Assembly: GCF_011386835.1 (NCBI RefSeq) | Contig: NC_088810.1 | Location: 5,146,001-5,210,000 of the forward strand | Length of the DNA stretch: 64,000 nt | Direction: 5' to 3' | From: Chrysemys picta bellii | Lineage: Eukaryota | Shown here: in pieces, positions 9,467 through 47,963 of the stretch | Layout of the letters: the number at the start of each line of letters is the position of its first letter | Position numbering within the stretch: position 1 is the first letter of the stretch | The notes under the pieces: model-generated | The model's input: only the letters and a program-made list of their open reading frames with translations | Database searches by the model: none | What the model was told of the DNA's origin: nothing | Program-made: the position numbers and the translations under genes

Positions 9467-12400
9467 TTAGACATTGGAGTAGATCTGCTCAGACAGCAAA
9501 TGCGGCTGCCAAGTGCCAACGTTCCCATAATGTCCGGCTCCTTCTGCTGCTAAATTCTCATAGTCTTCCACTCGCTCCATGGCCTCGTAGTCGTCAATGC
9601 CCAGCTCCTGAGGATGCAAAGAGGAAGGATTGACTCACCCAGAGGTTGCTGAGATGCAGCCACCGCTGGGGCGGGGCAGATGGGGAACAGCCGCACACAA
9701 CGCTGCATAGGGACGGCTCACTCAGGGCCGAGATGCAGCCGGGGGCAGGAAACAAAGACTAATGTATCTATGGCGACAGAATGGATTTTAGGGAGGCAAA
9801 TGTAATTAACTATCTGGGAATCTGGCCAGGACGCCGGGGTCCACATCCTGTCCCCCTCGGTCTGACAAACAGAGGAGACGTCTGGTTACTCGGCACTCAG
9901 GTGCTCTGACCAATGCTAATAACTGCAGCACGGCGCCCCCTAGTGCCGCCCTGGGGCACCGGGGCCAACCCTGACTGCCAGGGGAGAGCCTCCACCCTGC
10001 AGGTCTCTCATCCAGGGAGCAACCAGGCCCCTCCCAGCTTAGCCCAGGACGATGGTAGGGGGATCATGTGGCCCTGGCCTTTCCCACCTCTCCCCCCGCC
10101 TTTGCCTTGCTGTATAGGTTGAACTGCTCGTCCTTCTTCGCCTTGCTCGCCTTCCCCCCCTTGAGGGACGGCCTCTGCTCCCCGTTGCCTTCATTGTCAT
10201 AGATCGAGGGACCCTCTTCTTCGTCTTTCCTGCAGGAGAGAACAGGCTTTAGCTTGGTTCCCGCAGCCCTGGAGCTGCCGACGAGCCCACCCTGCAGTAG
10301 CCCATCCCAGGGGTTAACAGTGGCAGGGGGTCCTGTGGGTTAAGCCTTCTAATATTTAGTGACTGGCATTCCTCTGGGTTAACGCTGATAATATCTAGTG
10401 GCAGGGAGTTCCACAGGTTAACTCTGCAACTCTCCAGTGGCAAGGGAGCCCTGTGGGTTAACCGTGCTAATCCCCAGTGACAGGGAGTCCCACGAGCTAA
10501 CCCTGCAAATATCCAGTTGCAGGGAGTTCCGCAGGTTAACCCTGCAACTATCCAATGGCAAGGAAGCCCTGTGGATTAACCGTGCTAATCCCCAGTTGCA
10601 GGGAGTTCCACAGGTTAACCCTGCAAATATCCAGTGGCAAGGAAGCCCTGTGGGTTAACCGTGCTAATCCCCCAGTTGCAGGGAGTCCCACGGGCTAACC
10701 CTGCAAATATCTAGTTGCAGGGAGTCCCACGGGTTAATTATTTCTTACAGGCGCCTCATACCACAGGAGACCAGCCAGGTTCTGTCCAATCCTGCTTACT
10801 TGCCTGCTTTTCACAGGTGTCTCCCTATGTCCTAATGAATCCACCCCCTCATTCCTTCTGGTCCAGTTCTCTGGGTCTCTCTATATCTGACCTCCACCCA
10901 TGCCCCTTCCTCTTCTGTGCCTGCTGCCATGCCCCCTGGTGTTGAGTGGGGCCTGCTGCCCATGCAGCTCCTTTGTGGCTAAGCCATCAGACCTCCAACC
11001 CCATGGCCTGGTGCCCTCACCTGGCTCTGGCTACCTTGTAGACCACGATCGCCAGCACCGAGAGGAGCAGAACGCCACCAATGACTCCGCTGGAGACCAT
11101 GAGCAGCAAATTATCGTCCCCTGCAGAGACAGATAGACACAGTTGGTGGCAAAGGTGGGATTAATGGTGTCAAGCAGTGCATAAAGGGGGAGCAGCATCT
11201 ATATGTGGGTAATTACAGTAACAGCATGACCATGCATGGGTGGGAGGCTGCTATCGTCCCCTCACCTGAGCTAAATTAGACAGGCAGCTTGAACTCATGG
11301 TGGGTATATATAAGCAAATATGGGAAGGGTGCACTACTTACTCAGCGGTTCCTAGGTTACTCGGGCCCTGGGGTAAATTAGAGGGGTGGCTTATATTTGG
11401 GTGTGAGTATATATGGTAACCCCATACCCATGCTCAGGCTATATTAAATAAATGGCAGATTTATACTGTGTAAAAGAGTAATTATGGTAATACCAGACAT
11501 GAGTGTGTATGTGAGTAATTACAGCAGCCGGCCACCGTATGCCCAGCCCCCTGAGCTACCCAGACATGCGGCAGATACCCAGGTCAGGGTGTATACATGA
11601 GTAATTAAGGTAACAGGGAGCCCCAAGCCCAGCCCCCGAAAGCTACCCCAGACATGCGGTTGGGGTTGCCATCTGTCTAATGACACAAACCCAAACACCC
11701 TTGCCCTGCCCCCTGCCCCGCCCCTGCCTGAGGCCCCACCCCTGCCCTGCCCCTTCTCCCAGGCCCCACCCCGCTCACTCCATCCCCCACTCCCTCCGTC
11801 GCTCGCTCTCCCCCACCCTCACTCACTTTCAGTGGGCTGGGGCAGGGGATTGGGGTGTGGGAGAGGATGAGGGGTGCAGGCTCTGGGAGGGAGTTTGGGT
11901 GCAGGAGGGGACTCAGGGCTGGGGCAGGAGTTGGGGTGTGGGAGAGGGTGAGGGGTGCGAGTTCTGGGAGGGAGTTTGGTTGCAGGAGGGGGATTCTGAT
12001 CTGAGGCAGGGGTTGGGGTGCAGGAGGGGGTGTGGGGTGCAGGCTCTGGAAAGGAGTTTGAGTGCAGGAGGGGGCTCAGGGCTGGGGAAGAGGCTGGGTG
12101 CAGGAGGAGATGAGGGGTGTGGGCTCCAGCCGGGAGGCGCTTACCTTGGGTGGCTCCCAGATGCACAGCGGGGCTAAGGCAGGCTCCCTGCTTGCCCCGG
12201 CCCTGCACTGCTCCCGGAAGCGGCCGGCACGTCCCTGCTGTGCTCCACGCACTGCCTGTGCCCACAAGCGCTGCCCCCGCAGCTCCCATTGGCCGCAGTT
12301 CCAGGCCAATGGGAGCTGTGGAGTCGGTGCTCGGGGAGGGGGCAGTGCACGGAGATGCACCCCTGCCAGGGGCCGCAGGGATGTGTGGGCCGTTTCCAGG

Positions 12401-15400
12401 AGCAGTGCCTTAGCCCTGCTGCGCCGCCGGACTTTTAGCCCCTAAAATCTCCCGGTTTGGCTGCAGTAGCCTCCAGGAGATGGAGTCCGATTCCGAGAGA
12501 CTCCCGGCCAAACCGGGACGGTTGGCATGACAGGACTCCCGCTCATTTCCCACCCACGTGCGGAATGAATTTTGTTACGTGCCCCAGTATGGAGGTGACG
12601 TGTGACACGACCCTGTGACACATCACCTCCATATTGGGGCATGCAACAAAATTAATGTGGTGGGGGTGGGGCTGAGGAGTGTGGAGGGTGGGAGGGGCTC
12701 AGGACTGGGGCAGAGGGTTGGGGTGCAGGGGGTGAGGGCTCTGGATGCGGGTGCAGGCCGCGCAGATTAGGGGGAACTCCGGTTGGCAACCCTACATGCG
12801 GCCGATACCCCGGTCGGGGCATGTACATGAGCTGTTACGGTACCAGGGCACCCCATGCCCAGTCCCCCACCGGTCCCCGGTACCTGCGGGCACAAAGGGC
12901 AGTGTGGCCTGGCTCTGTCCATGGGCGTTGGTGGCAGCGCAGGACACGTTGGCCAGGGCCCGGGTCGGGCCCCGCAGCTCCCCACTCACGGCCGGGCCCC
13001 GCGCCCCCGAGGTCGCTCGCAGCTCAGGGCCCTCGAAGTCCCCCGGGAGGGTGCGGTTGGGCAGGCGCCACTCGAGGCGGGGGTGGTGGGTTCCCCTCGG
13101 CCGTGCAGTGACACGTGGCCGTTCCTCCGGGCCCGCTGCCCCACACCGTGCAGTTCCCCTGTGGCAGCAGCTCCGGGGGGTCTGCAATGGGACACAGGAC
13201 ATGTGGGGCACTGAGCCCAGATCCCCCAGCCGCCCCTGAACCAGCCAGCGCCCCGCCTGGGGGCCAGCGCCCCCTAGAGGGGAATGGCCTTGTGCCCCCT
13301 TCCCTGCCACCCAAGCCTTGGGGTTGATCGGGGCCAGCACCCTCCAAAGGGGAAAAGCCCCATGCCCCATTTCCAGCCACCCTGAGCCAGCCCCCCAAAC
13401 TGGGGCTGGATCAGGGCCTGCACCCCCTAGAGAGGAAAGGCCCCGTAGCTCCTTCTACACCCCCCTGAGCCAGACAGTCCCCTGTCCCAGGACAGGATCG
13501 GGTCTAGCGCCCCCTAGAGGGGAAAGGCCCTGTGTCTCATTCCCCACCCCCCTGAGCCCACCCCTGCCCTGTGGCCGGATCGGGGCCAGCGCCCCTACAG
13601 GGCAGGATCCCCCGCCCCCTCACACTCCACATCGAGGTTTGCGGCGGGCGAGTCCTCCCCCAGGCCGATCTCGTTCTCGGCGGCGCAGCGGTACGGCCCC
13701 GAGAGGCGCCCCACAGCCAGCACCGTCACCTCGGGGCCCCGGCCCAGCCCCCGCAGCAGGGCCCGGCGCGGCCCCTGGAACCAGCGGTAGGTGGTGGCCG
13801 GTGGGTGGCTCTGGCTGGTGCAGCGCAGGGTGACGTTGTCGCCTTCCTTCAGCCGGGCCGGCCCCACCACGGCCACAGCTGTGCCCCGCGGGCGATCTGG
13901 GGGGGAGGGGCACATTAGGGGGAACCTGCCCCCACCAGCCACCCTGAGACCCCAGAGCTGCTCCAGCCTCCGGCCTTCCCCAGAACATCATCTGTGCCAC
14001 CCCCTCCCTCTCTGGGGCCAGCCCCCACCACGAGGGGAAAGCCCCCCACCCCGCCCTCTGCAGAGCGGCGCCCCCAGTAACCCCCTGCCCTGCCCCTGCC
14101 CCACAGCGACCCCTCCTGACCCTCTGCCCCGCCCCCTGCCCCACAGCACCCCCTGCTGACCCCACCCACCCTGCCCCCTACAGCACAGCACCCCCTACTG
14201 ACCCTCTGCCCCACCTCGTCCTGCACAGTGCCCCCTGCTGACCCCCTGCCCTGCCCCCTGCCCCACAGCACCCCCTCCTGACCCTCCGCCCCTCTCCCTG
14301 CCCCACAGCACCCCCTCCTGACTCCCCGCCCCTCCCCCTGTCCCACAGCACCCCCTGCTGACCTTCTGCCCACCCTCTGCAGCACGGCGCCCCCTCCTGC
14401 CCTGCCCCTGCACCACAGCGACCCCTACTGACCCCACCCACCCCGCCCCCTACAGCACAGCACCCCCTATTGACCCTCTGACCCGCCCCGTCCCCCACAG
14501 CGCCCCCTGCTGACCTTCCACCCACCCTCTGCAGCATGGCGCCCCCTCCTGCCCTGCCCCTGCACCACAGCGACTCCTACTGACCCCACCCACCCACCCT
14601 CTACAGCACAGCACCCCCTATTGACCCTCCGACCCACCCCATCCCCCACAGCGCCCCCTGCTGACCCCCTGCCCTGACCCCCGCACCATGGTGTCCTCTT
14701 CTGTCCCTTGCCCTGCCCCCTGTACCACAGCACCTTCTCCTAACTCTCCGCCCCTCCCCATGTCCCACAGCGCCCCCTGCTGACCTTCCACCCCGCCCGC
14801 TGGAGCACTGCGCCCCCTAGTGCCAGGCTGGGACATCGGGGCCAGCCCTGCCTGCCATGGGAGAGCCCCCACCCTGCCCCCTGCAGCACAGCGCCCCCTA
14901 GTGCCACCCTGGGGCATTGGGACCAGCCCTGCCTGCCATGGGAGAGCCCCCACCCCGCCCCCTGCAGCACAGCGCCCCCTAGTGCCACCCTGGGGCATTG
15001 GGACCAGCCCTGCCTGCCATGGGAGAGCCCCCACCCCGCCCCCTGCAGCACAGCGCCCCCTACCGCCCTCTCACTCACACTTGACCTGCAGGTACAGCCC
15101 GTTGCGAGCCTGCTGCTGGTTGGGGAAGGTGGCCGTGCACTGCAGGTACCGCCCGTGGTCCTTGTACGAGGGGGTGTAGCTCAGCTCCGACTCCGCCCGC
15201 CAGCCGCCCCCTGCCAGCCGCTCGTGGCTGGTCGCGGCTTTGCCCCCCCCGGGGCTCCAGCCCAGGCTGGGAGGGGCCGAGGGGCAGGTGTGGCGGATGG
15301 AGCAGGTGATGGTGGTTCGGTCGCCCTCGATCAGCACCCCGGGGTCGCTCAGCATCAGCGGGTCTGGAGTGTCTGGGGGAGACAGACGGGGAGGGTGTCA

Positions 15401-16518
15401 CAGACTGCGGCGAGTGATTGGCCTCTGATTCAGCCACCTCTGGGGTGGGTCACAGGGGCTGCTTATACAGGGGCTCCTCGCCCGGCGCCAAGATGCAGCC
15501 GCCTCTGGGGTGGGGCAGCTGTTTATACAAGGACCCCTCCCCAGTGCTGAGATGCAGCCGCCTCTGGGGTGGGGTGCAGGGATTGTGTTCTCCCCCTGGC
15601 TCTGGGAGGGGAGTGGGGTCTAATGGTTAGAGCAGGGAGTGTTGCTGCGGTCTGTGCTTTTAATGGCCGGTAACAGAGGAAGCAGTTTTGGGGGAAGGGC
15701 TGGGGGAGGAAGTGGGGTTCCTGGGGGGCTGTGCAGGGAGCTCTGTGTTTTTCCTTGATGTGGTGTCTGCATATGGGGTTGGGCGGCTGTTTATACAGGC
15801 ATCCTGCAATGCGACCGCCTCTGGGGCGGAACCCTCTGCTCCCAGTCTCCCTTTGGCTGTATCCCTGGGGCTGCCCTGTGCGAGGTGGGGGGGGTCTCCA
15901 GTTACCTGCCACCTCCACCCGGACTGTGACGTCGTAGAAGCGATGCCTGACAGAGTCGGGGTTGATCCAGACGTAGTAGCTCATGGCGTCCTCGCTCCGC
16001 ACGGGGTTTATGCTCAGGGTGCAGTTCTTCATCTCCAGATCCCCCAGCAGCTGCGTCCGGGCCTGGTACTCGGCCAGCACGCTGGCCGTGCCCTTGCTGT
16101 TATAGATCTCGGGGTAGCCCCTGCTCCGGTACTGGTACCAGACCACGTTGAATGGACCGCCCAGGGACTCGCGGGAGCCGGGGTAGGTGAACGAACAGGG
16201 GATGACCACACAGGAACCCTTCAGAGCCCGGATGGTCCCAGGGAGCGAGGATGTCCAGGACCCAGAGACATGGCTGTAACACAACGCTGGAAAGACAGAA
16301 TGTAGCGCTGAGGTGCAGCCACCTCTGGGGCGGGGCAGCTGGGGAACAGCCACACATAACGCCACACAGGTATGGCTCACCTGGGGCCGAGATGCAGCCA
16401 CCTCTGGGGCGGGGCAGCTGGGGAACAGGGATGGCAGAGACTTACCTTCCAGCAGGGCCAGCAGGAGGTGCTGCCACGTGAGACTCACAGCGTGTCCGGC
16501 CTGGGGGGATCCGGCCAT
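9467..16518 (-). CDS. Siglec/MAG-like Ig receptor A: SP-V-C2-C2-C2-TM-tail, about 566 aa; one +1 frameshift in exon 5 as assembled
   Basis: Exons 16518-16446 (signal MAGSPQAGHAVSLTWQHLLLALLEG), 16286-15906 (V-set, GSCVVIPCSF), 15372-15079, 13896-13624, 13181-12884 (298 nt, extra C at 13079-13083), 11120-11021 (TM), 10229-10088, 9607-9467 (ends EQIYSNV*). All GT-AG with compatible phases. Non-coding exon with donor at 18259. Confidence 0.85.
10290..10740. repeat. ~42-bp tandem repeat with alternating A/B units (~84-bp higher-order period)
   Basis: GGAAGCCCTGTGGGTTAACCGTGCTAATCC alternates with GGGAGTTCCACAGGTTAACCCTGCAAATAT; last-but-one intron of Siglec A. Confidence 0.8.
11661..12794. mobile_element. 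Non-autonomous hAT DNA transposon (composite, 1134 bp)
   Basis: TIRs TGGGGTTGCCA / TGGCAACCCTA; 8-bp TSD CATGCGGT/CATGCGGC; internal ~31-bp-arm hairpin at 12568-12653. Confidence 0.8.
14800..15060 (-). repeat. ~80-bp tandem repeat carrying CTCF-like motifs (4 copies)
   Basis: GCGCCCCCTAGTGCC at about 14811, 14891, 14971, with a variant at 15051. Confidence 0.75.
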
Positions 16519-20775: not shown

Positions 20776-23700
20776 ATGCCTGCCCCCCAGCATTACCCCG
20801 AGCTGATCCAGCAGCACCGGCAGGCCCTGCTCTGCTGGATTAAGGGGAACCCCCAGCCCCTGCTGCGTCGGCTCCACGACACCAAGGTGCTGAGCCAGGC
20901 CGAGTACTTCGCCCTACTGGAGACGGCCCCCGAGATGAACCAGGTCATCGCGCTGCTGGAGTCGGTCAGCCAGGGTGTCGAGCGGAGCCGGTGCTTCCTG
21001 GAGGCGCTGCGGGAGCTGCAGGAGGAATACGGCGCCGAGCTCCAGCAATGGCTGAAGGAGAAGTACCCGGAGAAAAAGAGACCGTGTCCTCCATTGCAAC
21101 CAGGTACGGGGCCTGTCCCCTCTAGGGCGCACCAGCTCCCACCCAGCCCCAGGGCGGGGCACTGCCTGGCTCAGGGGGGTGGGACACGTGGCCTGTTCCC
21201 TCCAGGGGGCACCAGCTCCCACCCAGCCCCAGGGCGGGGCACTGCCTGGCTCAGGGGGGTGGGACACGTGGCCTGTCCCCTCCAGGGGGCGCCAGCTCCC
21301 ATCCAGCCCCAGGGTGGGGCACTGCCTGGCTCAGGGGGGCTGGCACTGGGGGCTGCATCTGTAATTTGGGGGAAATCACAGGAACGCCATAAGGTTCTGC
21401 CTCACGTCAGCCATCGCTGTGTCCAGGTGTCTTTCCCATCCCTTCCTCCAGCTTTCCATCTTCAACCATCCCTCCGTCTACCCGGCTTTCTTTTACAGCC
21501 TTCCACGTGGCCAGCCGTGGTTTTATGTCCCTCCAACCTGCCGTCCAAACAGCCTGTTTGATATCCATCATCCTTCCGTCTTTCTGTACCCAGACAGCCT
21601 TCCGATCCACCCACCCGTCCACCCATCCTTCTCTAGTTCCATTCACCCACCCACCCTTCCACCTATCCTTCTTTTATAGCTATCCATACAAATAACTGCC
21701 CTTTTTTCCATCTATCCATCCAACCCCCCCACCCACCCATCCAACCCCCCAACCATCCATCCACCCATCCAACTTTCCATCCATCCTTCTTTTACTGCTA
21801 CCCATACATAGATCAAATTATCCTTCTTTATATCCATCCATCCACCCATGCAACTTTTTTATATCCATCCACCCATCACAGGGTTCTCTACTCACCACTG
21901 GAGCGCCTCCTCCTGGCCCCTTGGAGGATTAGCGCTTTCCAGGTCCGATGCCCCTTCTGCAGGGTTGCGCCCCCTGCTGTCTCTCTCTCTCTCACTCTCA
22001 CACTCCGGGTGCTCTCCCTTCAAGGCTCGGCCCTCTGGCCAGCTCACCCTGGGTTTTCCCCCTTCCAGGGTATCAAAGTCTTTCCATAGTAACTGTCTCC
22101 AGCTGTCTTCTCAGTCACTGCCCAGGTGGCACCACTTCCCCAGGGGCTGGTGGGTAACACGGACCCAGCCTCTATTCCAGGTTCCAGCCCAGCAACCTTC
22201 TAATCCACAGCCAAGGTCTGCACCATCTTAAACCTCGCTGCCCTTTCCCTGCCCCTCTCCCCCGGCTCCCTTCCTTCCCTCGCTAACGTCCAGACAGTGG
22301 CTGCAGGCTCCTTCCTTGCAGCCCCCTTCTGCTGTGAGTTTCCTGGCTTTATCCCAGCCCCACCTGTTCCTGCTCAGCCGGGCTCCATCACCAGTCAGGG
22401 GTTACTTCAGCCGCTCAGTTCCCTTTAGCTGTGGCCTACACAGTTAACTGGCCCCTTCTCAGCCTCGTCCCATCTTTTTTATATCCATCCATCCATCCAT
22501 CCATCCACACAAGCAGCCTTCCAGCCATAGCCCCAGCTAGCCACATTTTTATATCTATCCATCCTTTATATCTATCCATCCATCCTTTTTATATCCCTCC
22601 AACCATCCATCCAGCCTTCCATCTATCTACCCATCCACCTTCCATCCATCTACCCTTCCAACCTTCCATTCATCCAACCTTTTCCATCCATGTCTTTTTA
22701 TATCTATCCACCTAACCAACGTCCATCCACCTTCCATCCGTCTACCCATCCAGCCTTCAATCCATGCAACCTTCCACCCATCCATCCGTCTTCTTTCCAT
22801 CCATCCACCCACACCTCCAGCCTTCCATCCATCTACCCATCCACCTTCCATCCATCTACCCTTCCAACCTTCCATTCATCCAATCTTTTCCATCCATGTC
22901 TTTTTATATCTATCCACCTAACCAACGTCCATCCACCTTCCATCCGTCTACCCATCCAGCCTTCAATCCATGCAACCTTCCACCCATCCATCCGTCTTCT
23001 TTCCATCCATCCACCCACACCTCCAGCCTTCCATCCATCTACCCATCCACCTTCCATCCATCTACCCTTCCAACCTTCCATTCATCCAATCTTTTCATCC
23101 ATGTCTTTTTATATCTATCCACCTAACCAATGTCCATCCACCTTCCATCCGTCTACCCATCCAGCCTTCAATCCATGCAACCTTCCACCCATCCATCCGT
23201 CTTCTTTCCATCCATCCACCCACACCTCCAGCCTTCCATCCATCTACCCATCCACCTTCCATCCATCTACCCTTCCAACCTTCCATTCATCCAATCTTTT
23301 CCATCCATGTCTTTTTATATCTATCCACCTAACCAACGTCCATCCACCTTCCATCCGTCTACCCATCCAGCCTTCAATCCATGCAACATTCCACCCATCC
23401 ATCCGTCTTCTTTACGTCCATCCACCCACACCGCCAGCCTTCCATCCATCTTTTTTATTTCCATCCATCCCCACATCCAGACTTGCAGCCTTCTTCCACC
23501 CATCTGTCATTTTATATCCATCCACCCACCCATCCAACCTTCCAGCTGTCCATCTTTCTCGTATCTATTCACTCATCCGACTCTCCTTTTGATATCCATC
23601 CATCCACACATCCAGCCACCTTTCTTTAATATTCATATAGCCAACTCTCTTTTTTTTATAGCCATCCACCCATCCAACCACTATTTTTATCTCCATCCAT

Positions 23701-26700
23701 CTTTCTTTTGCAGACAATCCCAACCCTCCGAAATCCAACCACACATTCCTGCGGAAAATCCTGCGGAAACACACCAAGAAGTATGAGCCAACCCCAGAGC
23801 CGCCAGGTGAGACCCCCCCTGCCACCCCCACCTCACCAACCAACCTCAGGAACAATTATCAATGCGGGATCATCAGCTCAAGACAGGCTGGGAGGGGAGT
23901 GGGGTCTAGTGGGTTAGAATAGGGGGACTGGGAGCCCGGACTCCTGGGTTCTATCCCTGTCTCTGGGAGGGGAATGGGGTCTAGTGGTCAGAATAGGGGG
24001 ACTGGGAGCCAGGGCTCCTGGGTTCTATCCCTGTCTCTGGGAGGGGAATGGGGTCTAGTGGTTAGCATGGGGGGGCTAGGAGCCAGGACTCCTGGGTTCT
24101 ATCCTCAGCTCTGGGAGGGAAGTGGGGTCTAGTGGGTTAGAATAGGGAGACTGAGAGCCCGGACTCCTGGGTTCTATCCCTGTCTCTGGGAGGGGAATGG
24201 GGTCTAGTGGTCAGAATAGGGGGGCTGGGAGCCAGGGCTCCTGGGTTCTCTCCCCAGCTCTGGGAGGGGAATGGGGTCTAGTGGTTAGCATGTGGGGGCT
24301 GGGAGCCAGGATTCCTGGGTTCTCTTCCCCAGTTCTGAGGCCACAGCTGGATGTCATGGAGGAGGTGTGGGCAGGGAGAGGCTTGGCACAGCCCAGCTCT
24401 GGGGCCCGGATTTGGGTCCTTCCCCCAAGCAACAAGGACACTTGTCCCTTGTCCAACAGGTGAGGAGCGCACTAGGAACCTGAACTTCCGAAAGGCCCCG
24501 AGCGCCCCGCTGAAAGGTATGGAGTGAGGGGGCTGGGTTGGGGAGGGAGGTCGGGGGAGGGAGGTCAGAGGGAGGGTCAGGGTGTTGGGAGCAGGGGAGA
24601 GAGTTGGGGTGACAGATGGGCCTGGGGAAGGGAAGGGAAGTTGTGGGGAGGGATGGAGGGGTGGGAGCGGGGGTTGGGGGCAGGGCCAGGGATGGTGGGG
24701 TCAGGTTAGGGGAGTTGGGAAAGGATCTTCGGGTTGGGGGCGAGGCAGGGGCAGAGATGGGGGTTGAGGGGAGGATTTGGGGGCAGAGATGGGGGAGTTG
24801 CAGAGGGATTGGGGGAAAAGATGGGGGTTGAGGGAGGCCTGGGGGAGGGGGGGACAGATAGGGGAGTTGCAGAAGGACTGGGGGCTGGGAGGGCTGGAGG
24901 AGTTAGGAGGCGGATCGAGGCGTGAGGGGCAGACCCTGGGGTCTGGGGGGTGCAGACACTCGACCCCCCCGCTGTTCCTCCCCTCCCCCCAGCTGTCCTG
25001 CAGCGCCACCGGGCCTCTCTGCTGCGGCATACCCAGCAGCTGTGCACCAACGCCAGTGACGCCCGCTCCTGCGGCCTCCTCGAGATCCGCTACACCCCGC
25101 TGCTGCTGCTGGACCACCCCGGCCCCACCGCCCCCCCCCGGGCATGAGCACCTGGCCCTGGCCGCCCGCCGCGCCCGCCTCCTCCCGCTCCACGCCCCCC
25201 GCCGGCTCCCCCTGCGCCACCTCCTGCCCCGCTGCCCACCGAGACCCAGGCCCCCCGCCGGGTGGCCCTGAGCGGCGCCGCCGGCATCGGCAAGAGCGTG
25301 ACCGTGCAGAAGATCTTGCACGACTGGGCGCTGGGGCGCGGCGTTCCAGGGCCCCCTCTGCGCCTTGGATTTCTCCTGCCGGGAGCTCAGCGTGATGTCC
25401 AGCCCGGTCACCCTGGAGGGGCTGATCTGTGCCAAGCGTCCCCACCTCCAGGAGGTGCTGCCCGAGCTGCTGGCGCGGCCCGGGGACCTCCTCGTCCTCG
25501 TGGACGGTTTGGACGAATTCCGGCACCCGCTGGAAGGCGGAACTCCCCGCCACCGGCCCGGCCACCCGGCCCACGTCAAGGAGCTGCTGCGGGGACTCCT
25601 CGACGGGACCCTGCTGCCCGGGGCGGCCCGTCGTGGTGACGTCCCGGCCGTGCCCGACCCTCTCCGGCATCCCCTTTGATCGCCACTTGCTGATCCTCGG
25701 CTTTGACGAGGACCAGGTGGAGGACTACTTCCACCGGTTCTTCCGGGATGCCGAGCGAGCCGCTGCCGTGCAGGGCTACATCTCCGGCCACCAAGGCTTA
25801 GCCGGGCTTTGCTTCATCCCCCTCTACTGCTTCATCTTATGCACCGCCCTGGGGGAGTTCTTCCCCGCCGGCCAGGCAGCTGACCCATCTCCGCCCACCA
25901 CCATCACCGAGGTCTATCGCTGCTATATGGCCACCATCCTGGGTCGCAGCTGGTCCTCCGGAGCCGGGCGCCGGGCAGCTGGTCCTGCGCCTGGGGCGCC
26001 TGGCGTACGCCGCCCTGTTGGCCGGCAAGATCCTCTTCACCCCAGCTGAGCTGCGGGAATTCGGATTCGACCCCCAAGACCTTCCGGGCACTTTCTTCAA
26101 CCCCATCTTCTCCAGAGAAGACCACCAGGTCTATTGCTTCTTCCACCTGACGGTGCAGGAGTTCCTGGCCGCGCTCTACTGCGTGGCTGCCCTGGATCCT
26201 GGCGCCGAGGACCTCACGCCCTGCCTGGATCTCTGGTGGGAGGGATCGGCCCAGCAGGACGGGGACCCGGAGCCCTCCTGGACGTCACCAGGCGAATCCA
26301 GTCTCCTCCACTCCACCAGGCAGCTCCTGAGGGGCCACCAGCCCCGGTGGGACAATCTCCAGATGTTCGCCAGGTTCTTCATGGGGCTGCTGACCTCCAG
26401 GATGGAGGGGAAGCTGGAGGGGTTGACCGCAGGCTTCTCCGGAGACGTGCTGGGGCCCGTGGCGGACTGGCTGGGGAGGAAGCTCAGGGGAGACACCGAG
26501 AGGCGCCTCCTCTCGCTCCTGCACTGCGTGGCGGAGCTGCGCCAGGAGGGGGTGACGGGCCGGGTGGCCCGCGAGCTGGAAGACGTCAACCTCTTCAAGG
26601 TGACCCTCAACCCAGCCGACTGCGCCGCCCTGGCCTACGTGCTGGGGGGCCTCCGAGCCCGGGAGAGTGAAGAACCTCAACTTGAGCTACAGCAACATGG

Positions 26701-26754
26701 CATGGCTGGGCTGCGCAGGATCCGGGGGCTGCTGCACCGCTGCGAGACGCTGCA

Positions 26755-26797
<43 letters not shown>

Positions 26798-28828
26798 CGC
26801 CACCCAGGACTCCTGGGTTCTAGCCCCAGCTCTGGGAGGGGGCCTAGTGGTTAGAGCAGGGGGGGCTGGGAGTCAGGACTCCTGGGTTCTATCCCTGGCT
26901 GTGGGTGGGGAGTGGGGGTCTAGTGGTTAGAGCGGCGGGGGGGGGGATTAAGAGCCAGGACTCCTGGGTTCTATCCTAGCTCCGGGAGCGGGGGGTGCTC
27001 GGTGCTCCGGTCCCCTCTCACGCTGACCACTCCTCTGCAGGTTGCGCTACAATTCTCTGGACAAGGAGGCAGCCGTCATAGAGGCCGAGGTGCTGAGATC
27101 CCCCCAGTGCCAAGTGAAACGGCTGCTGTGAGTGACCACGGCCCCAGGACGGGGCGCAGGCTGGCGGGGGGGGGGGGGCAATGGGGCACATGGGCTTTCC
27201 CCTCTAGGGGACCCCAGCTCTGATCCAGCCCCAGCGTGGGGACTGGCTGGCTCAGGGGGGCAGAAAATGGGCTTTGGGCCCTTCTAACTCCATATGGGAA
27301 TTGAGTTTGCCGGGTCTCAGCCCCGTTCCCAGCTGGGACAGGGACTATCTCCCCCTCTCCCCCCCTCAGATACTAACTGACCCCTTTGCTGGCAGCCCCA
27401 AAAGAGATGCCAAGGGCTGGCTGGGCCGTGGGGCGTGAGCCCCCCTCTCTGGGGTTCAGGGGTGGGATGCAGCCAGTGTTGTCGGGCTGGGGGGAATTTC
27501 TGAACTGGCCCCTTTCCCGCTCTCGAGTGGATCCCGTCGCTCTGCTACCCTGCAGCCTGTGCGGGAACTGCCTGGGCTCGGAGGGGGCGAGGCGGCTGTG
27601 GGAGGCCCTGCGGGAGAACCGCACCCTGGAGGAGCTGTACCTGGACATCACCGGCATCACCGACAGCGGCCTGGACAACCTGCTGCCCTGCCTCCTGGCC
27701 AACAGCACCCTCCGGCTCCTGACGTGAGTGCCAGCAGCTCCCTGCAGAGGGCTCTGTGCTGCGGGGGGAGCTCTCCCCTGACAGGCAGGGCTGGCCCGGA
27801 GCCCCAGCATGGCACTAGGGGGCGATGTGCTGCAGGGGGTGTGATGGGGACTCTCCCCTGACAGGCAGGGCTGGCCCGGAGCCCCAGCATGGCACTAGGG
27901 GGCGATGTGCTGCAGGGGGTGGGATGGGGACTCTCCCCTGGCAGGCAGGGCTGGTCCCGATGCCCCTGGGTGGCGCTAGGGGGCGCTGTGCTGCAGGGGG
28001 TGGGATGGGGACTCTCCCTTGGCAGTCAGGGTTGGCCCCAATACCCCTGCAGGGCGCTAGGGGGCGCTGTGCTGCAGGGGGTGGGATGGGGACTCTCCCC
28101 TGGCAGTCAGGGTTGACCCCAATACCCCTGCAGGGCACTAGGGGGCGCTGTGCTGCAGGGCCCCGATGCCCCTGGGTGGCGCTAGGGGGCGCTGTGCTGC
28201 AGGGGTGGGATGGGCACTCTCCCCTAGCAGTCAGTTCTGGCCTCAATATTGCATCTCTGCACCGGGTGAGGGGGTCCTTGTATAAACAGCCCGCACGCTC
28301 CACCACAGAGGTGGCCGCATTTCAGTGTTGAGTGAGGGATCCCTGTATAACTAGCTCTCATGCTGCACCCCAGCAGCAGCCGCATCTCAGCGCCCAGTAT
28401 ATACAATGGCTCCACCGCTGCCAGCCCCCGGCAAGCAATCCCAATATAAACCGGCCGCTGCACCCCAGAGGCAGCTGCATCTTTGCGATCCCCTTACGTG
28501 TTGTCCCCCGCCTCTGGGCAGCATCGTGGGGAACCGGCTGAGCGAGGCCGGGCAGCAGATCCTGTCGGAGCTGAGCCGTCGCAAGCCAGGCCTGAAGGTG
28601 ATCAGCACGTTCGAGAGCGACATGGGCCTGCTCCAGGCCTACCTGGACTGGGTGGAAGAGATCAAGGCCGACCCCGACCAGATGGACGCCGTGAAGAATG
28701 CCGACGCCCTGCGCTGCATCGTCTCCGTCCTCCGGGACTTGGACGAATCCAGGACCAGCCCCGAGGCCCGGGCCAGAATCCAAGAGCTGAGGAGAGAGAT
28801 CAGCGCCCTCCTGGGGGAGAAGGAATGA
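20776..28828 (+). CDS. CARD-NACHT-LRR NLR with NLRX1-like body and C-terminal three-helix domain, about 932 aa after correcting 7 frameshifts (assembly errors or recent pseudogene)
   Basis: Exons 20776-21103 (CARD: LIQQHRQALL...VLSQAEY), 23714-23806, 24460-24516, 24993-26754 (Walker A GAAGIGKS, Walker B LLVLVDGLDEF, VVTSRP, FHLTVQEFLAA), 27041-27127, 27556-27723, 28522-28828. All GT-AG with compatible phases. AATAAA at 29636. An upstream coding exon cannot be excluded because the ATG directly follows an acceptor. Confidence 0.85.
21873..22470. mobile_element. Probable degenerate LTR in NLR intron 1
   Basis: Complex block starting TCACAGGGTTCTCTACTCACCACTG inside a (CCAT)n tract; resembles turtle LTRs I recall; termini decayed, no clean TSD. 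Confidence 0.45.
22560..23480. repeat. ~206-bp tandem repeat built from CCAT/CCTT microsatellite (about 4 copies)
   Basis: TGTCTTTTTATATCTATCCACCTAACCAA recurs at about 22690, 22896, 23101, 23307. Confidence 0.85.
27811..28200 (+). repeat. 80-bp tandem repeat carrying CTCF-like motifs (6 copies) in the last NLR intron
   Basis: GGC(A/G)CTAGGGGGCG(A/C)TG at about 27811, 27891, 27971, 28051, 28131, 28178. Confidence 0.8.
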
Positions 28829-30639: not shown

Positions 30640-30910
30640 CCCAAATAGGCGTAGGTCCCGCCCACATCCCAATAGGCCCCTCCCCAGAGAACCATAGTCC
30701 CCTCCCATCCATGTCACCGCCCCCGGTCCCCTACGAAGCTCCGCCCTATCTCCTACAGCCTTTCTCCAGGCTCCGCCCCATCTCGCCACAAGCTCCGCCC
30801 TCCGCCCGTCTAGCCACGCCCCACCGCGTGGCGCTGATCGGTTTATTCCGCCCACGGAGCCGGGACCATGGAGGGGCCGAGCGGGGCCGCCCGGAGCGCG
30901 GGGTGAGGGG
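30640..30910 (+). promoter_or_regulatory. CpG-rich promoter and exon 1 of C19orf84
   Basis: Dense CpGs and repeated CCGCCC GC-boxes directly upstream of GGACCATGG (ATG at 30868). Confidence 0.65.
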
Positions 30911-33900
30911 CGGGGCGCTGCCCTCCTCCCCATAGACCCTCCCTTCCACCCCATAGACCCCCAGCCAGGGACCCCCCTTCCACGCCATAGACCCCCCCAG
31001 CCGCCCATGGGACCCCCAGCCAGGGAAACCCTCCTCTACAGAACCCCCCCTCCACCCCATAGACCCCCCCCAGGAACCCCCTCCACCCCATAGATCCCCC
31101 CTCCACCCCATAGACCTCCCCCAGGGACCCCCCTCCACCCCATAGACCCCCCCATAGACCTCCCCCAGGGACCCCCCTCCACTCCATACATCCCCCTTCC
31201 ACCCCATAGACCCCCCCAGCCAGGGACCCCCCTTCCATGCCATAGACCCCCCCCCAGCCACCCATGGGAGCCCCAGCCAAGGAAACCCTCCTCTACAGAA
31301 CCCCCCTCCACCCCATAGACCCCCCCCATAGACCTCCCCCAGGGACCCCCCTCCACCCCATAGATCCCCCTTCCACCCCATAGAACCCCCACAGCCAGGG
31401 ACCCCCCTTCCACCCCATAGATCCCCCATCTACCCCATAGACCTCCCCCAGGGACCCCCGCCCCATAGAACCCCAGCCAGGGACCCCCCCTCCACCCCAT
31501 AGCTTCCCTCCACCCCATAGACCACCCAGGCACCCCCCTCCGCCCCATAGAACCCCAGCCAGGGATCTCCCCTCCACCCCATAGCTTCCCTCCACCCCAT
31601 AGACCCCCCCAGGGACCCCCTTCCGCCCCATAGAACCCCCCAGCCACCCATGGGACCCCCAGCCAGCGAAACCCTCCCCCATGGAACCCCCCCTCCACCC
31701 CATAGACCCCCCCTTAGACCTCCCCAGGCACCGCCTCCGCCCCATAGAACCCCAGCCAGGGACTCCCCCCTCCACCCCATAGACCTCCCCCAGGGACACC
31801 CCTCCACCCCATAGACCCCCCATAGACCTCCCCCAGGGACCCCCCTCCACCCCATAGATCCCCCTTCCACCCCCATAGATCCCCCCCAGCCAGGGACCCC
31901 CCTTCCATGCTATAGACACCCCCCCAGCCACCCATGGGAGCCCCAGCCAGGGAAACCCTCCCCCATGGAACCCCCCCTCCACCCCATAGACCTCCCTCAG
32001 GGACCCCCCTCCACCCCATAGATCCCCCTTCCACCCCATAGACCCCCACAGCCAGGGACCCCCCCTCCACCCCATAGATTCCCTCCACCCCATAGACCAC
32101 CCAGGCACCCCCCTCCGCCCCATAGAACCCCAGCCAGGGGTCTCCCCTCCACCCCATAGCTTCCCTCCACCCCATAGACCCCCCCAGGGACCCCCTTCTG
32201 CCCCATAGAACCCCCCAGCCACCCATGGGACCCCCAGCCAGCGAAACCCTCCCCCATGGAACCCCCCCTCCACCCCATAGACCCCCCCTTAGACCTCCCC
32301 CAGGCACCCCCTCCACCCCATAGAACCCCAGCCAGGGACTCCCCCCTCCACCCCATAGCTTCTCTCCACCCTATAGACCCCCTCAGGGAACCCCCTCCAC
32401 CCCATAGCTCCCCCCAGCCACCCATGGGACCCCCAGCCAGCGAAACCCTCCCCCACTGAACCCCTTCTCCACCCCATAGACCCCCCCCTTAGACCTCCCC
32501 CAGGGACCCCCTCCACCCCATAGAACCCCAGCCAGGGACCCCCCTTCGACCCCATAGCTTCCCTCCATCCCATAGACCTCCTCAGGGAACCCCTGCCACC
32601 CCATAGACCTCCCCCAGGGACCTCCCTCCACCCCATAGACCCCCCCCAGCTGCCCATGGGACCCCCAGCCAGGGAAACCCTCCCCCATGGAATCCCCCTC
32701 CACCCCATAGACCTCCCCCAGAGACTCCATCCATGGGAACTCCCATTCCAGCCCCATAGATCCCCCCAACCAGAGACCTCCATGCCTCCCATCCGACCCC
32801 CTCCACCCCATAGAACCCCAGCCAGGGACCCCCCTTCGACCCCATAGCTTCCCTCCACCCCATAGACCCCCTCAGGGAACCCCCGCCATGCCATAGACCT
32901 CCCCCAGGGACCCACCTCCACCCCATAGACCTCCCCCAGAGACTCCATCCATGGGAACCCCCATTCCAGCCCCATAGATCCCCCCAACCAGAGACCTCCA
33001 TGCCTCCCATCCGACCCCATGTCCAGCCCCTTAACCCCACAACCAGGGCATCCTCCCCGACATTAGAACTCTCTTCCAGCTTAAGAGTCTCCCTTCCTCC
33101 AGCCCCACCCAGCCAGGGAACCCCCTCCCACAAACACCCCCACACACAGACCACCGCCCCTCCCTCCATAGAATTCCCATCTCCTGTTGGAGAGGGGAGG
33201 ATCTCTCTGTCTCTGACCCCCTTTTCCGTTCCCCCCGCAGCTCCCCCAGGCCCAGCGAGCCCAGCCCCACAGAGCCGCCCGCCTCGGACCAGACCGCGCT
33301 GGAGAAGATGCCCGTTGTGCCCTCCTGCCCTACCCCCGGCTCTGCCACACCTTGGATCCTGGGTCGCCCCTCGGCCGGGGCCCTGTCCTCCATCACCGTG
33401 CCCGTCCGGCTGGACGCCCTCGCCTACCTGCTCAACAGCGCCCTCTTGGGGGCCTACTCGGCCTTGCCACAGACGCCCCTCTCCGGCAGCCACGGGGCAT
33501 TGGCCATGGGTCACGGCGGGCCTCCCCAACATGCACTGGGCTGCGGGTGTCAGCCACGCTACTGCTGTGGCCCCCAGCCGGCTCGGGTGGGGTGCTGTGG
33601 GTCTGGCGCCGTGGGGCAGAGCAGCGCCGGCTGCTCCCAAGAGATACCTGGGGGCCGCAGCGATTGGCAGGACTCCTCTGCGAGATGGGACCGGCGAGGG
33701 TCTCCGTCGCTGAGTGGCTGGGGGGAGAACCGGCGAGCAAGGGGGCAGAAAGATTTCAGTCGGCCCTGGGGGTGGCAGAGGCCGTGGGGCGAGGCGGACT
33801 CCGCCCCACGCAAGGCGGGACAGTGGGGGCCGGGGAGAGCCCAGAGCTCAGATTATGCGGCCAGGAAGCGGAACCAAGATGGCTGCCCGTGGGACGCCCC

Positions 33901-34435
33901 TGGGGCAAAGAGATGGTCTAGTGGGGGGGTGAAGAGATGGGGGGAAACTGAGGCAGCCAAAGCCACCAGGGAAGATTGGGAGGCAGATTACGGGGGATCC
34001 AGCGCCCGAGGGAGCGTCTTGGAGAAAGCCCGGTCTTCCCAGCCCAGCCTCCCAGCTTCCCAGGAAGGAGAAGACTGGGAAAAGGAGTATGAGGAGTCCC
34101 CCAAATCGGCGCCGGGGGTTCCCCCTCTTCCACAGGTGGCTTTGAAGGTTCAACCGGCCTCCCTCCAGGAGAGGACAACGCCCCGCCCAGCTTGCAAGGA
34201 CGGCAGCGTCTCCAGCTATCTCCAGAACCTCTTTGCCGACCTGCGCGGGGGGTCCAGCACCGCCTCAGAGCCGCGCCGGGGGAGACAGCCCCCTGGAGGT
34301 GCCGCCGAACGTGGGACACGGCTCCCGGAAGGAGGAGGAGGCCCGAGTGGCCAGGGGTCTGCCAAGCTCGGCGATTTCACGGCCCAGCGCGTTGACCTCC
34401 CCAGAGCCGCCGCAGAGAACGAGGACAGTGCGTGA
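30868..34435 (+). CDS. C19orf84: C19orf84 orthologue (piRNA-pathway/SPOCD1-associated factor in mammals), 409 aa, 2 exons
   Basis: Exon 1 30868-30902 (MEGPSGAARSAG, donor GG|GTGAG, phase 2) joins exon 2 33241-34435 in frame. Block SSITVPVRLDALAYLLNSALLGAY (33386-33457) matches human [24 protein letters not shown] as recalled (17/24 identical). Cys cluster, GW motifs and EDWExxY are also shared. Lies directly upstream of LIM2 on the same strand, as in human. Confidence 0.85.
30920..33000. repeat. C-rich minisatellite filling most of C19orf84 intron 1
   Basis: CCCCATAGACC...CAGCCAGGGACCCCCC units over about 2.1 kb; source of the Gly/Trp-rich reverse pseudo-ORFs. Confidence 0.9.
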
Positions 34436-47830: not shown

Positions 47831-47963
47831 GGATCCATCTGTGAAGCTGCTGAGGCCCAGGCCCCAGGGCTCTGGCTTAGCCCTGCTGCTGTGGGCCGGG
47901 ATTGCCCCTGACTCATTCCCCACCCCCAGGTGCTTCCCGGATCCCAGCGCTGCCCCCCACACG

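What the first reader, a model, noticed from the sequence alone, without database searches (positions are those of the whole stretch)
9467..16286. Siglec-like receptor A lacks the sialic-acid arginine and carries an activating-type six-tyrosine tail
Seen: the V-set F strand reads DAMSYYVWINPD, with Trp (15969-15967) where Siglecs have the essential Arg (YYFR). The spliced tail has SIYDN, NLYSK, DYEAM, DYENL, HYGNV and QIYSNV: four YxN motifs, one YxxM, and an ITAM-like YENL-x7-YGNV. None fits the canonical ITIM, and the TM has no charged residue. Established: YxN binds Grb2, YxxM binds PI3K p85, paired YxxL/I binds Syk. Inference: a sialic-acid-independent receptor with built-in activating signalling, unlike inhibitory or DAP12-coupled mammalian Siglecs.
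Basis: partly seen in the sequence, partly recalled or inferred. Interest (0 to 1): 0.7.

Follow-up and report, generated by a model that had tools for sequence, protein, structure and literature searches.

The report
Ancient Trp-type Siglec-like receptor gene
This painted-turtle gene belongs to an old, unnamed branch of the Siglec immune-receptor family, found from bony fish to platypus, that always has tryptophan where Siglecs need arginine to bind sialic acid and whose tail has adaptor-docking tyrosines but no inhibitory motifs.

Summary
On the minus strand, 16518-9467, lies an eight-exon receptor gene: signal peptide, V-set, three C2 Ig domains, uncharged TM and a six-tyrosine tail. Trp (15969-15967) aligns with the essential Arg of MAG and Siglec-5. 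The tail has four YxN, one YxxM and no ITIM.

Three corrections:
- RNA contigs from three runs splice the tail at 10106/9607 through a GC-AG intron, not at 10088. The mRNA lacks AKAGGE; all tyrosines stay.
- The window has a 1-bp insertion (C-run 13083-13079) that breaks the fourth Ig exon. mRNA contigs from two runs and the Emys orthologue lack it.
- The Trp is not a turtle peculiarity. It is invariant in an aligned sample of 70 domains chosen from the Trp-type hits of a lineage seen in ray-finned fish, lungfish, amphibians, tuatara, squamates, turtles and platypus. No bird, crocodilian, therian or shark was identified among the Trp-type hits whose names I looked up.

DYEN-x and a C-terminal Y-x-N are kept in all eight non-sauropsid tails I could read, from fish to platypus, and in most of the 26 reptile tails. 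YExM is kept in 23 of 25 reptile tails with a readable TM. The ITAM-like pair is not conserved.

Public annotation gives only automatic names (MAG-like, CD22-like, Siglec-5/10/15). I found no paper on this branch. Ligand and signalling sign are untested.

The parts
16446..16518 (-). Exon 1: ATG (16518-16516) and signal peptide MAGSPQAGHAVSLTWQHLLLALLE, phase-1 donor g|gtaag
   Evidence: Sequence read. It is identical to the N-terminus of the C. picta models P0002 and P0187; the other C. picta model, P0158, differs at one residue. tblastn of P0158 reaches 16518.
15906..16286 (-). Exon 2: Siglec-type V-set domain (127 codons, phase 1-1)
   Evidence: Translation. Pfam V-set 2.9e-06. PDB hits MAG 1.4e-14 and Siglec-5 1.8e-13. 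AF2 pLDDT 92 and Foldseek top hits Siglec-7, MAG, sialoadhesin and CD33 at TM about 0.8.
15967..15969 (-). TGG codon for Trp106, at the position of the Siglec essential Arg (F strand, modelled strand 102-107)
   Evidence: Alignments. Invariant in alignment A1. Identical codon in Emys.
15079..15372 (-). Exon 3: C2-set domain 1 with three Cys (ITC, HTC, LQC), as in Siglec domain 2
   Evidence: Translation. Pfam C2-set_2 5e-06. The GT-AG intron 15078-13897 is bridged by RNA contigs of X1, X2 and X3 and not by the DNA run X16.
13624..13896 (-). Exon 4: C2/I-set Ig domain 2
   Evidence: Translation. Pfam Ig_2 1.1e-07. X2 contig record 19 joins 15079 to 13896 and 13624 to 13181.
12884..13181 (-). 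Exon 5: fourth Ig domain, broken in the window by one extra C
   Evidence: Two reading frames. tblastn gives split hits at 13185-13090 and 13082-12885.
13079..13083 (-). C-run of 5 in the window. It has 4 C in mRNA contigs and 4 in the aligned Emys sequence, and the extra C shifts the frame to a stop after ...GGLRGP
   Evidence: table 4: one letter is left out at 13079 in X1 and X2, but not in DNA run X16 (depth 33). Emys L001 has a 1-nt gap at this place.
11021..11120 (-). Exon 6: stalk, uncharged TM and KVARAR stop-transfer
   Evidence: RNA contigs cover 11020-11124 and bridge the GT-AG intron 11020-10230 in X1, X2 and X3.
10106..10229 (-). Exon 7: cytoplasmic exon 1 (SIYDN, FNLYSK), ending at the GC donor
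   Evidence: Joint 9606/10105 with 3 ambiguous letters, seen in X1, X2 and X3 and absent in DNA run X16. The only canonical placement is GC at 10105-10104 with AG at 9609-9608. RefSeq model P0158 has the same NLYSK|ELGIDDY junction.
9467..9607 (-). Exon 8 coding part: DYEAM, DYENL, HYGNV, QIYSNV and stop TAA (9469-9467). The 3' UTR continues below 9467
   Evidence: X3 contig record 22 runs TM exon, then exon 7, then exon 8, and on past 9450.

Best explanation
Gene A is the painted-turtle orthologue of an old, unnamed Siglec-like lineage that I call Trp-type here. It is a type I membrane protein of about 560 aa with a Siglec-fold V-set, three C2 Ig domains, an uncharged TM and a tail of about 90 aa.

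Shown: the F-strand position that carries the sialic-acid-clamping Arg in every binding-competent Siglec is Trp here. It is Trp in all 70 aligned Trp-type domains, a sample chosen from the Trp-type hits of ray-finned fish to platypus. The tail has no ITIM or ITSM in any of 31 orthologous tails. DYEN-x and a C-terminal [ILVF]Yx[NS][VILM] are kept in nearly all of them, and YExM in most reptiles. The gene is transcribed and spliced.

Inferred: the conserved Trp on the ligand face marks a changed but still selected binding site. The ligand is a non-sialic or non-canonically bound glycan, or a protein. After Src-family phosphorylation the tail docks Grb2-family SH2 adaptors at pYxN and PI3K p85 at pYxxM. 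That resembles CD19, CD28, LAT-type adaptors and the Grb2 arm of CD22, not SHP-1 recruitment or DAP12/Syk coupling. Whether the net output is activating or dampening is open.
For: Fold and family. Trp aligned with Arg. Trp in 139 V-set hits, and invariant in A1 together with C25, C30, C88, W49 and Y104. The named Trp-type proteins come from ray-finned fish (bichir-group reedfish, gar, paddlefish, eel, tarpon, arapaima), lungfish, salamanders, frogs, caecilians, tuatara, squamates, turtles and platypus. The tree places 43 of the 44 Arg-type domains, with the MAG and turtle CD33-like references, on one side of a branch (SH-aLRT 84); the Trp-type clades fall outside it, and the sauropsid clade has support 100. 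Tail conservation and absence of ITIM. A tail-only search finds only orthologues. Transcription and all introns downstream of the C2-1 exon. dN/dS against Emys is 0.41 overall, with pN/pS of 0.27 for the last exon. Established knowledge that I did not check here: the Grb2 SH2 prefers pYxN and the p85 SH2 prefers pYxxM.
Against: No binding or signalling data exist. The window copy itself carries a frameshift in Ig domain 4, so this haplotype may be null unless the extra C is an assembly error. YDN and YGN are not conserved outside turtles and some lizards. A basic residue at position 115 (56 of 70) and the retained A-strand Trp leave room for residual sialic-acid binding. Grb2 sites can serve inhibition (PMC5302901). 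The expressing cell type is unknown because run labels are coded. The tree rests on 125 columns, uses the quick method and has moderate support. Rows were drawn from hits to a Trp-type query, and A1 was built only from domains that have Trp.
Confidence: 0.6

Rival explanations
1. One reading: a built-in activating receptor in which YENL-x7-YGNV works as an ITAM-like Syk dock alongside Grb2 and PI3K sites.
For: The motif is present in the window. It also occurs in several turtles and lizards if Val is accepted at +3.
Against: A strict ITAM is found in only 4 squamates. The second Tyr is Phe in tuatara and geckos and is missing in axolotl, caecilian and platypus. Emydura, Pelusios and Pelodiscus lack the pair. 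Turtle has Val at the second +3 position.
Confidence: 0.12
2. A dampening receptor without an ITIM. The pYxN sites recruit Grb2 with Dok-3, SHIP or PMCA, as CD22 Y828 does, so the net effect is inhibitory.
For: CD22 has a six-tyrosine tail with a DYENV-type Grb2 site that attenuates calcium signalling independently of ITIM and SHP-1 (PMC5302901). DYEN-x is the best conserved motif here.
Against: CD22 combines that site with three ITIMs, and here there are none. The conserved YExM points to PI3K.
Confidence: 0.2
3. The V-set still binds sialic acid, using another basic residue (R/K115 in HRFYD) with the retained aromatic residues.
For: The Siglec fold and cysteines are intact, W10 is kept in 68 of 70 domains, and R/K is at position 115 in 56 of 70.
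Against: In studied Siglecs, loss of the F-strand Arg abolishes binding; examples are human Siglec-XII R122C, ape Siglec-5/14 R to H and SIGLEC17P R to W (PMC7379906). Position 115 is not invariant.
Confidence: 0.15
4. In this turtle the gene is a decaying pseudogene, and the Trp and tail are relics.
For: There is a 1-bp frameshift in exon 5 of the window, and DNA run X16 shows the same form.
Against: mRNA contigs from two runs carry the intact 4-C form and are correctly spliced. Emys is intact. dN/dS is 0.41. All other exons are open. RefSeq models exist. The exon is phase 1-1, so skipping it keeps the frame; Ig4-less models exist in Pelusios and Natator.
Confidence: 0.07

Closest known systems
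MAG (Siglec-4) and sialoadhesin (Siglec-1)
   Same: These are the best sequence matches of the V-set (1.5e-17 and 8e-17 with the family profile), and structural TM is about 0.8. They share the A-strand Trp, the three Siglec cysteines and a multi-Ig type I architecture. Automatic names for the orthologues are MAG-like or SMP-like.
   Different: MAG R118 and sialoadhesin R97 are replaced by Trp. The true MAG orthologues (lungfish, fish) sit in the Arg-type part of the tree. The tail is unrelated.
CD22 (Siglec-2)
   Same: It has a six-tyrosine tail that includes a DYENV-type Grb2 site (PMC5302901), and many orthologues are auto-named CD22-like.
   Different: CD22 has three ITIMs and R120. Its V-set is a distant match (4e-08) and lies on a long separate branch. 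Pfam Ig_CD22 scores below its cut-off.
Arg-mutated primate Siglecs (Siglec-XII R122C, Siglec-5/14 R to H, SIGLEC17P R to W)
   Same: They also lack the essential Arg, and SIGLEC17P even carries Trp at that site (PMC7379906).
   Different: Those are recent, lineage-specific, often polymorphic losses linked to pseudogenisation. Here Trp is invariant in the aligned Trp-type sample, which spans ray-finned fish, lungfish and tetrapods, and sits in the most conserved stretch of the domain.
CD33-related Siglecs, including the neighbouring Siglec B
   Same: Gene A lies in the same gene cluster, next to LIM2 and other PMP22/claudin-family genes and to C19orf84. Siglec B shares a very similar Ig exon and a terminal IYANI.
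   Different: CD33-related Siglecs keep YYFR and, by established knowledge, an ITIM plus an ITIM-like motif or a charged TM. Gene A has none of these.
YxN/YxxM signalling tails (CD28 YMNM, CD19, LAT/NTAL-type adaptors)
   Same: They combine pYxN and pYxxM motifs in an acidic context. This comparison is from established knowledge and was not tested here.
   Different: No sequence homology was detected. The tail-only search finds only orthologues.

Membership tests
Siglec family (sialic-acid-binding Ig-like lectins) | N-terminal V-set domain of Siglec fold | tested here: met
   PDB phmmer and profile searches give MAG, sialoadhesin and Siglec-5/7/10 at 1e-11 to 1e-17. The AF2 model has pLDDT 92, and the top 47 Foldseek hits are all Siglec V-sets.
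Siglec family (sialic-acid-binding Ig-like lectins) | Siglec cysteine pattern: two Cys in GSCxxIPC plus NC(T/S)L in the V-set, and a third Cys in the first C2 domain for the interdomain bond | tested here: met
   C25, C30 and C88 are invariant. The C2-1 exon has three Cys. The disulfide bonds themselves were not modelled.
Siglec family (sialic-acid-binding Ig-like lectins) | Essential Arg on the F strand | tested here: not met
   Trp106 is aligned with MAG R118 and the Siglec-5 Arg. It is Trp in all 70 domains of A1.
Siglec family (sialic-acid-binding Ig-like lectins) | Binds sialylated glycans | not testable with these tools
   This needs a glycan array or a sialidase-sensitive binding assay.
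Inhibitory CD33-related Siglec | Membrane-proximal ITIM and distal ITIM-like or ITSM motif | tested here: not met
   The regex scan finds no [SIVL]xYxx[ILV] in the turtle tail or in any of the 31 orthologous tails. TxYxx[VI] occurs only in a few squamates.
DAP12/DAP10-coupled activating Siglec (Siglec-14/15/16 type) | Lys or Arg inside the TM helix and a short tail | tested here: not met
   The TM LLLMVSSGVIGGVLLLSVLAIVVY is uncharged and the tail is about 90 aa.
ITAM-bearing receptor | Yxx[LI]-x6-8-Yxx[LI], conserved | tested here: not met
   Turtle has YENL-x7-YGNV, with Val at the second +3. The strict form is found in 4 of the 31 orthologous tails.
Trp-type Siglec-like lineage (unnamed; defined here) | Y-x-W-[IV]-[DN]-P-[DE] F-strand motif with (R/K)FYD, a Siglec cysteine pattern, and a tail ending in YxN | tested here: met
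   The window groups with the turtle and sauropsid clade at support 95 to 100.

The most novel reading that the evidence does not exclude
The Trp-type proteins are a fifth ancient Siglec lineage beside Siglec-1, -2, -4 and -15. It arose by the bony-vertebrate ancestor, expanded in fish as multi-V-set proteins, and was kept as a single gene in lepidosaurs, turtles and monotremes. I did not see it in birds, crocodilians or therians. In this reading the exposed, invariant Trp has retargeted the lectin face to a non-sialic ligand, and the tail signals through Grb2 and PI3K instead of SHP-1 or DAP12.
Probability: 0.4. Interest if true: 0.7.

Novelty: new variant of a known kind. Interest (0 to 1): 0.55.

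Why it matters
Reviews of fish Siglecs count only Siglec-1, CD22, MAG and Siglec-15 (PMC7226832). They treat loss of the essential Arg as a step towards pseudogenisation (PMC7379906). Here a whole lineage carries Trp at that site as a conserved feature, alongside a conserved non-ITIM tail. That argues for a selected, different function. It gives a natural system for asking what a Siglec fold does without sialic-acid clamping, and how the family signalled before ITIM and DAP12 pairing dominated in mammals. It also flags widespread mis-naming in automatic annotation, where one orthologue group is called MAG-like, SMP-like, CD22-like and Siglec-5, -10, -13, -14 or -15.

Tried and rejected
- Recent CGG to TGG loss in turtles: rejected, because Trp is present in every named group from ray-finned fish to platypus.
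- The 10088 GT donor: rejected for the three RNA runs laid, which use the GC donor at 10105. It is conserved in Emys and used in several gene models, so minor use is not excluded.
- An alternative ITIM-bearing last exon: X3 contig 22 runs from the TM exon through both tail exons and on into the 3' UTR, so there is none in that transcript.
- Homology of the tail to other receptors: the word search on tail residues 495-588 of P0003 found only orthologues. Pfam finds nothing in the tail exons.
- The look-up of encoding contigs for P0158: this product is not on record, so I could not check whether its three Ig4 exons are at this locus.
- Literature: six searches found no paper describing this lineage. 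Cao et al. 2009 on the CD33rSiglec locus is not in the library.
- Depth in DNA run X16 over exon 5 is 2 to 3.5 times its flanks. The tool warns that summed contig depth is not copy number, so I did not use it.
- Exons were handled one by one by reference, and full-length comparisons used public orthologue proteins.
Full report
**Gene structure**

The minus strand between 16518 and 9467 holds an eight-exon gene.
- Exon 1, 16518-16446: signal peptide.
- Exon 2, 16286-15906: V-set.
- Exon 3, 15372-15079: first C2 domain.
- Exon 4, 13896-13624: second Ig domain.
- Exon 5, 13181-12884: fourth Ig domain.
- Exon 6, 11120-11021: TM.
- Exon 7, 10229-10106: first cytoplasmic exon.
- Exon 8, 9607-9467: second cytoplasmic exon with the stop.

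The Ig exons are phase 1-1. Pfam calls V-set, C2-set_2 and Ig_2/Ig_3 on exons 2 to 4 and finds nothing on the tail exons. Earlier notes of this scan name the genome as painted turtle. The closest public proteins are Chrysemys picta bellii models.

**RNA evidence**

I laid contigs of three RNA-type runs and one DNA run on 9450-15449. The RNA contigs bridge these introns:
- 15078-13897 (GT-AG, all three runs).
- 13623-13182 (X2 record 19).
- 11020-10230 (GT-AG, all three runs).
- A tail intron, reported as joint 9606/10105 with three ambiguous letters.

The only canonical placement of the tail joint is a GC-AG intron, 10105-9608. None of these joints occurs in the DNA run, so they are splices.

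RefSeq model P0158 has the same NLYSK|ELGIDDY junction. Both donors are conserved in Emys.

The V-set exon lay outside the 6000-letter stretch that was allowed. The lengths of the X1 and X3 contigs upstream of 15375 fit a direct V-set to C2-1 splice, but I did not see that junction.

Exon 5 reads in two frames. The first is ...CTAEGNPPPPPRV... running to a stop. The second is ...PRLEWRLPNRTL...PFVPA. The break is a run of five C at 13083-13079.
- mRNA contigs of X1 and X2 leave out one letter at 13079, which restores PPPRLEW.
- In the aligned Emys orbicularis locus this run is one C shorter, and the frame is open.
- The DNA run X16 shows the window form at depth 33.

So the extra C is either a real null allele or a shared homopolymer artefact. 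An intact allele is expressed either way.

RefSeq model P0158 carries three tandem copies of this domain, whereas the window has one. An X3 contig carries the P0158-type ending AVLPFVP (table 7). This suggests that haplotypes differ.

**The Trp**

Residue 106 of the V-set translation is codon 15969-15967. It aligns with the essential Arg of Siglec-5 and MAG. It lies in modelled strand 102-107 of a confident AF2 model (pLDDT 92). The best structural matches of that model are Siglec-7, MAG, sialoadhesin and CD33, at TM about 0.8.

An exhaustive HMMER search with the V-set gave 980 hits. Among the V-set domains of the 150 best proteins, together with the other proteins fetched, 139 have Trp at this column and 81 have Arg.

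I aligned 70 Trp-type domains, chosen because they have Trp. W106 is invariant there, together with C25, C30, C88, W49, Y104, P15 and P58. The surrounding Y-x-W-[IV]-[DN]-P-[DE]...(R/K)FYD is the most conserved stretch.

**Who has it**

The Trp-type proteins whose names I looked up come from these groups:
- Turtles: Emys, Gopherus, Lepidochelys, Emydura, Pelusios, Pelodiscus, Carettochelys and others.
- Tuatara, many lizards and snakes.
- Platypus.
- Amphibians: axolotl, Pleurodeles, Ascaphus, Spea and a caecilian.
- Lungfish.
- Ray-finned fish: reedfish, gar, paddlefish, eel, tarpon, arapaima, piranha and a carangid.

Every Trp-type protein I named fell in these groups, so none was from a bird, crocodilian, therian or shark. 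Many fish-like Trp-type hits were left unnamed. The shark hits are Arg-type. The automatic names are inconsistent: MAG-like, SMP-like, CD22-like, and Siglec-5, -10, -13, -14 or -15.

**Tree**

I built a quick maximum-likelihood tree of 153 V-set domains over 125 columns.
- 43 of the 44 Arg-type domains, including lungfish and fish MAG, shark Siglecs and the turtle CD33-like Siglec B type, fall on one side of a branch with SH-aLRT 84.
- The Trp-type domains fall outside it in several clades: sauropsids (support 100), lungfish, amphibians with platypus, and fish.
- The sauropsid clade holds the window.
- Frog Gly-type and caecilian Ile-type variants sit inside the Trp-type group.
- One fish domain inside it has reverted to Arg.

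Support is moderate and the domain is short. The rows were also drawn from hits to a Trp-type query. I take the tree as showing that Trp is ancestral to this lineage, not as fixing its sister group.

**Tail**

I aligned 36 tails and scanned 31 for motifs.
- There is no canonical ITIM in any of the 31.
- DYEN[LVIMF] is kept in most sauropsids, platypus, axolotl and caecilian. Pelusios and Varanus lack it. YxN-type equivalents occur in lungfish and tarpon.
- The C-terminal [ILVF]Yx[NS][VILM] is kept throughout, apart from YSKV in Pelodiscus.
- YExM is kept in 23 of the 25 reptile tails scanned. Pelodiscus and Carettochelys lack it.
- FN[LM]YSK is kept in turtles, tuatara and lizards.
- SIYDN is YxN in most turtles, tuatara and geckos. 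It is His in Emys, Phe in Lepidochelys and Cys in Pelodiscus.
- The second Tyr of the ITAM-like pair is Phe in tuatara and geckos and is absent in amphibians and platypus.

A word search with the tail alone found only orthologues.

Against Emys, dN/dS is 0.41 over all exons. pN/pS is 0.19 for the first tail exon and 0.27 for the second, on small counts.

**Reading**

Shown:
- This is a transcribed Siglec-fold receptor of an old lineage.
- Trp at the Arg site is conserved.
- The tail conserves YxN and YxxM motifs and has no ITIM or TM charge.

Inferred, from the usual SH2 preferences and not tested here:
- The binding face has been retargeted.
- The tail docks Grb2-family adaptors and PI3K p85.

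The sign of signalling is open, because the Grb2 site of CD22 serves an ITIM-independent inhibitory route (PMC5302901). Arg loss in primate Siglecs is recent and goes with decay, including an Arg to Trp change in human SIGLEC17P (PMC7379906). Here the opposite pattern holds.

Fish Siglec surveys list only Siglec-1, CD22, MAG and Siglec-15 (PMC7226832). I found no paper on the Trp-type branch.

**Context**

PMP22/claudin-family exons lie at 3075-3473 (minus strand), 38743-38967 (plus strand, a LIM2-like start) and 48631-49029 (plus strand). Earlier notes place an NLR at 20776-28828 and C19orf84 at 30868-34435. From memory, which I did not check, this matches the NKG7-LIM2-C19orf84-SIGLEC10 part of the mammalian CD33-related Siglec region. 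An Arg-type Siglec B lies at 52145-55049, with a signal exon near 62050-62133.

**Limits**

- Exons were used one by one, and full-length comparisons used public orthologues.
- Run identities are coded, so tissue is unknown.
- Only contigs were available, not raw reads, so allele frequencies and minor splice forms cannot be judged.

Noticed in passing
window 9467-9484 (minus strand): The C-terminus ...QIYSNV-COOH also fits a class I PDZ ligand (S/T-x-V/I/L). It is kept in turtles, lizards, snakes (YSNI) and tuatara (YSSV) but not in amphibians or fish, so the last Tyr might gate a PDZ contact.
   Followed up: partly
window 52145-55049 and 62050-62133 (minus strand): Siglec B keeps the essential Arg (YYFRF in its public model P0206) and ends in EEHIYANI, a terminal YxN like gene A. 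Its Ig exon at 53466-53765 is about 70 to 75% identical in protein to gene A exon 5, which suggests exon exchange inside the cluster.
   Followed up: partly
window 12884-13181 compared with public model P0158: The current C. picta RefSeq model has three tandem copies of the fourth Ig domain and the window has one. An RNA contig of run X3 carries the P0158-type sequence at the exon end. The number of copies of this exon seems to differ between haplotypes or assemblies.
   Followed up: partly
proteins P0009, P0020, P0033, P0043, P0056 (frogs, caecilian): Amphibian V-sets with Gly (YYPGIN) or Ile at the Trp/Arg column branch inside the Trp-type group, so the site has changed again in amphibians.
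   Followed up: no
proteins P0006-P0015, P0198 (ray-finned fish): Fish Trp-type proteins often have two Trp-type V-sets followed by a third V-set with Arg, Gln or Lys (NGPFCFR), an architecture not seen in tetrapods.
   Followed up: no
window 13897-15078 and about 16330-16430, 15420-15560, 9650-9730: Intron 3 is filled by a G-rich minisatellite of roughly 60-bp units. A repeat containing ccccgccccagaggtggctgcatctc recurs in several introns.
   Followed up: no
window 3075-3788 (minus strand) and 47881-49029 (plus strand): Two near-identical PMP22/claudin-family gene pieces lie in opposite orientation on either side of the region, with a Siglec-type gene next to each. This hints at an inverted duplication.
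   Followed up: partly
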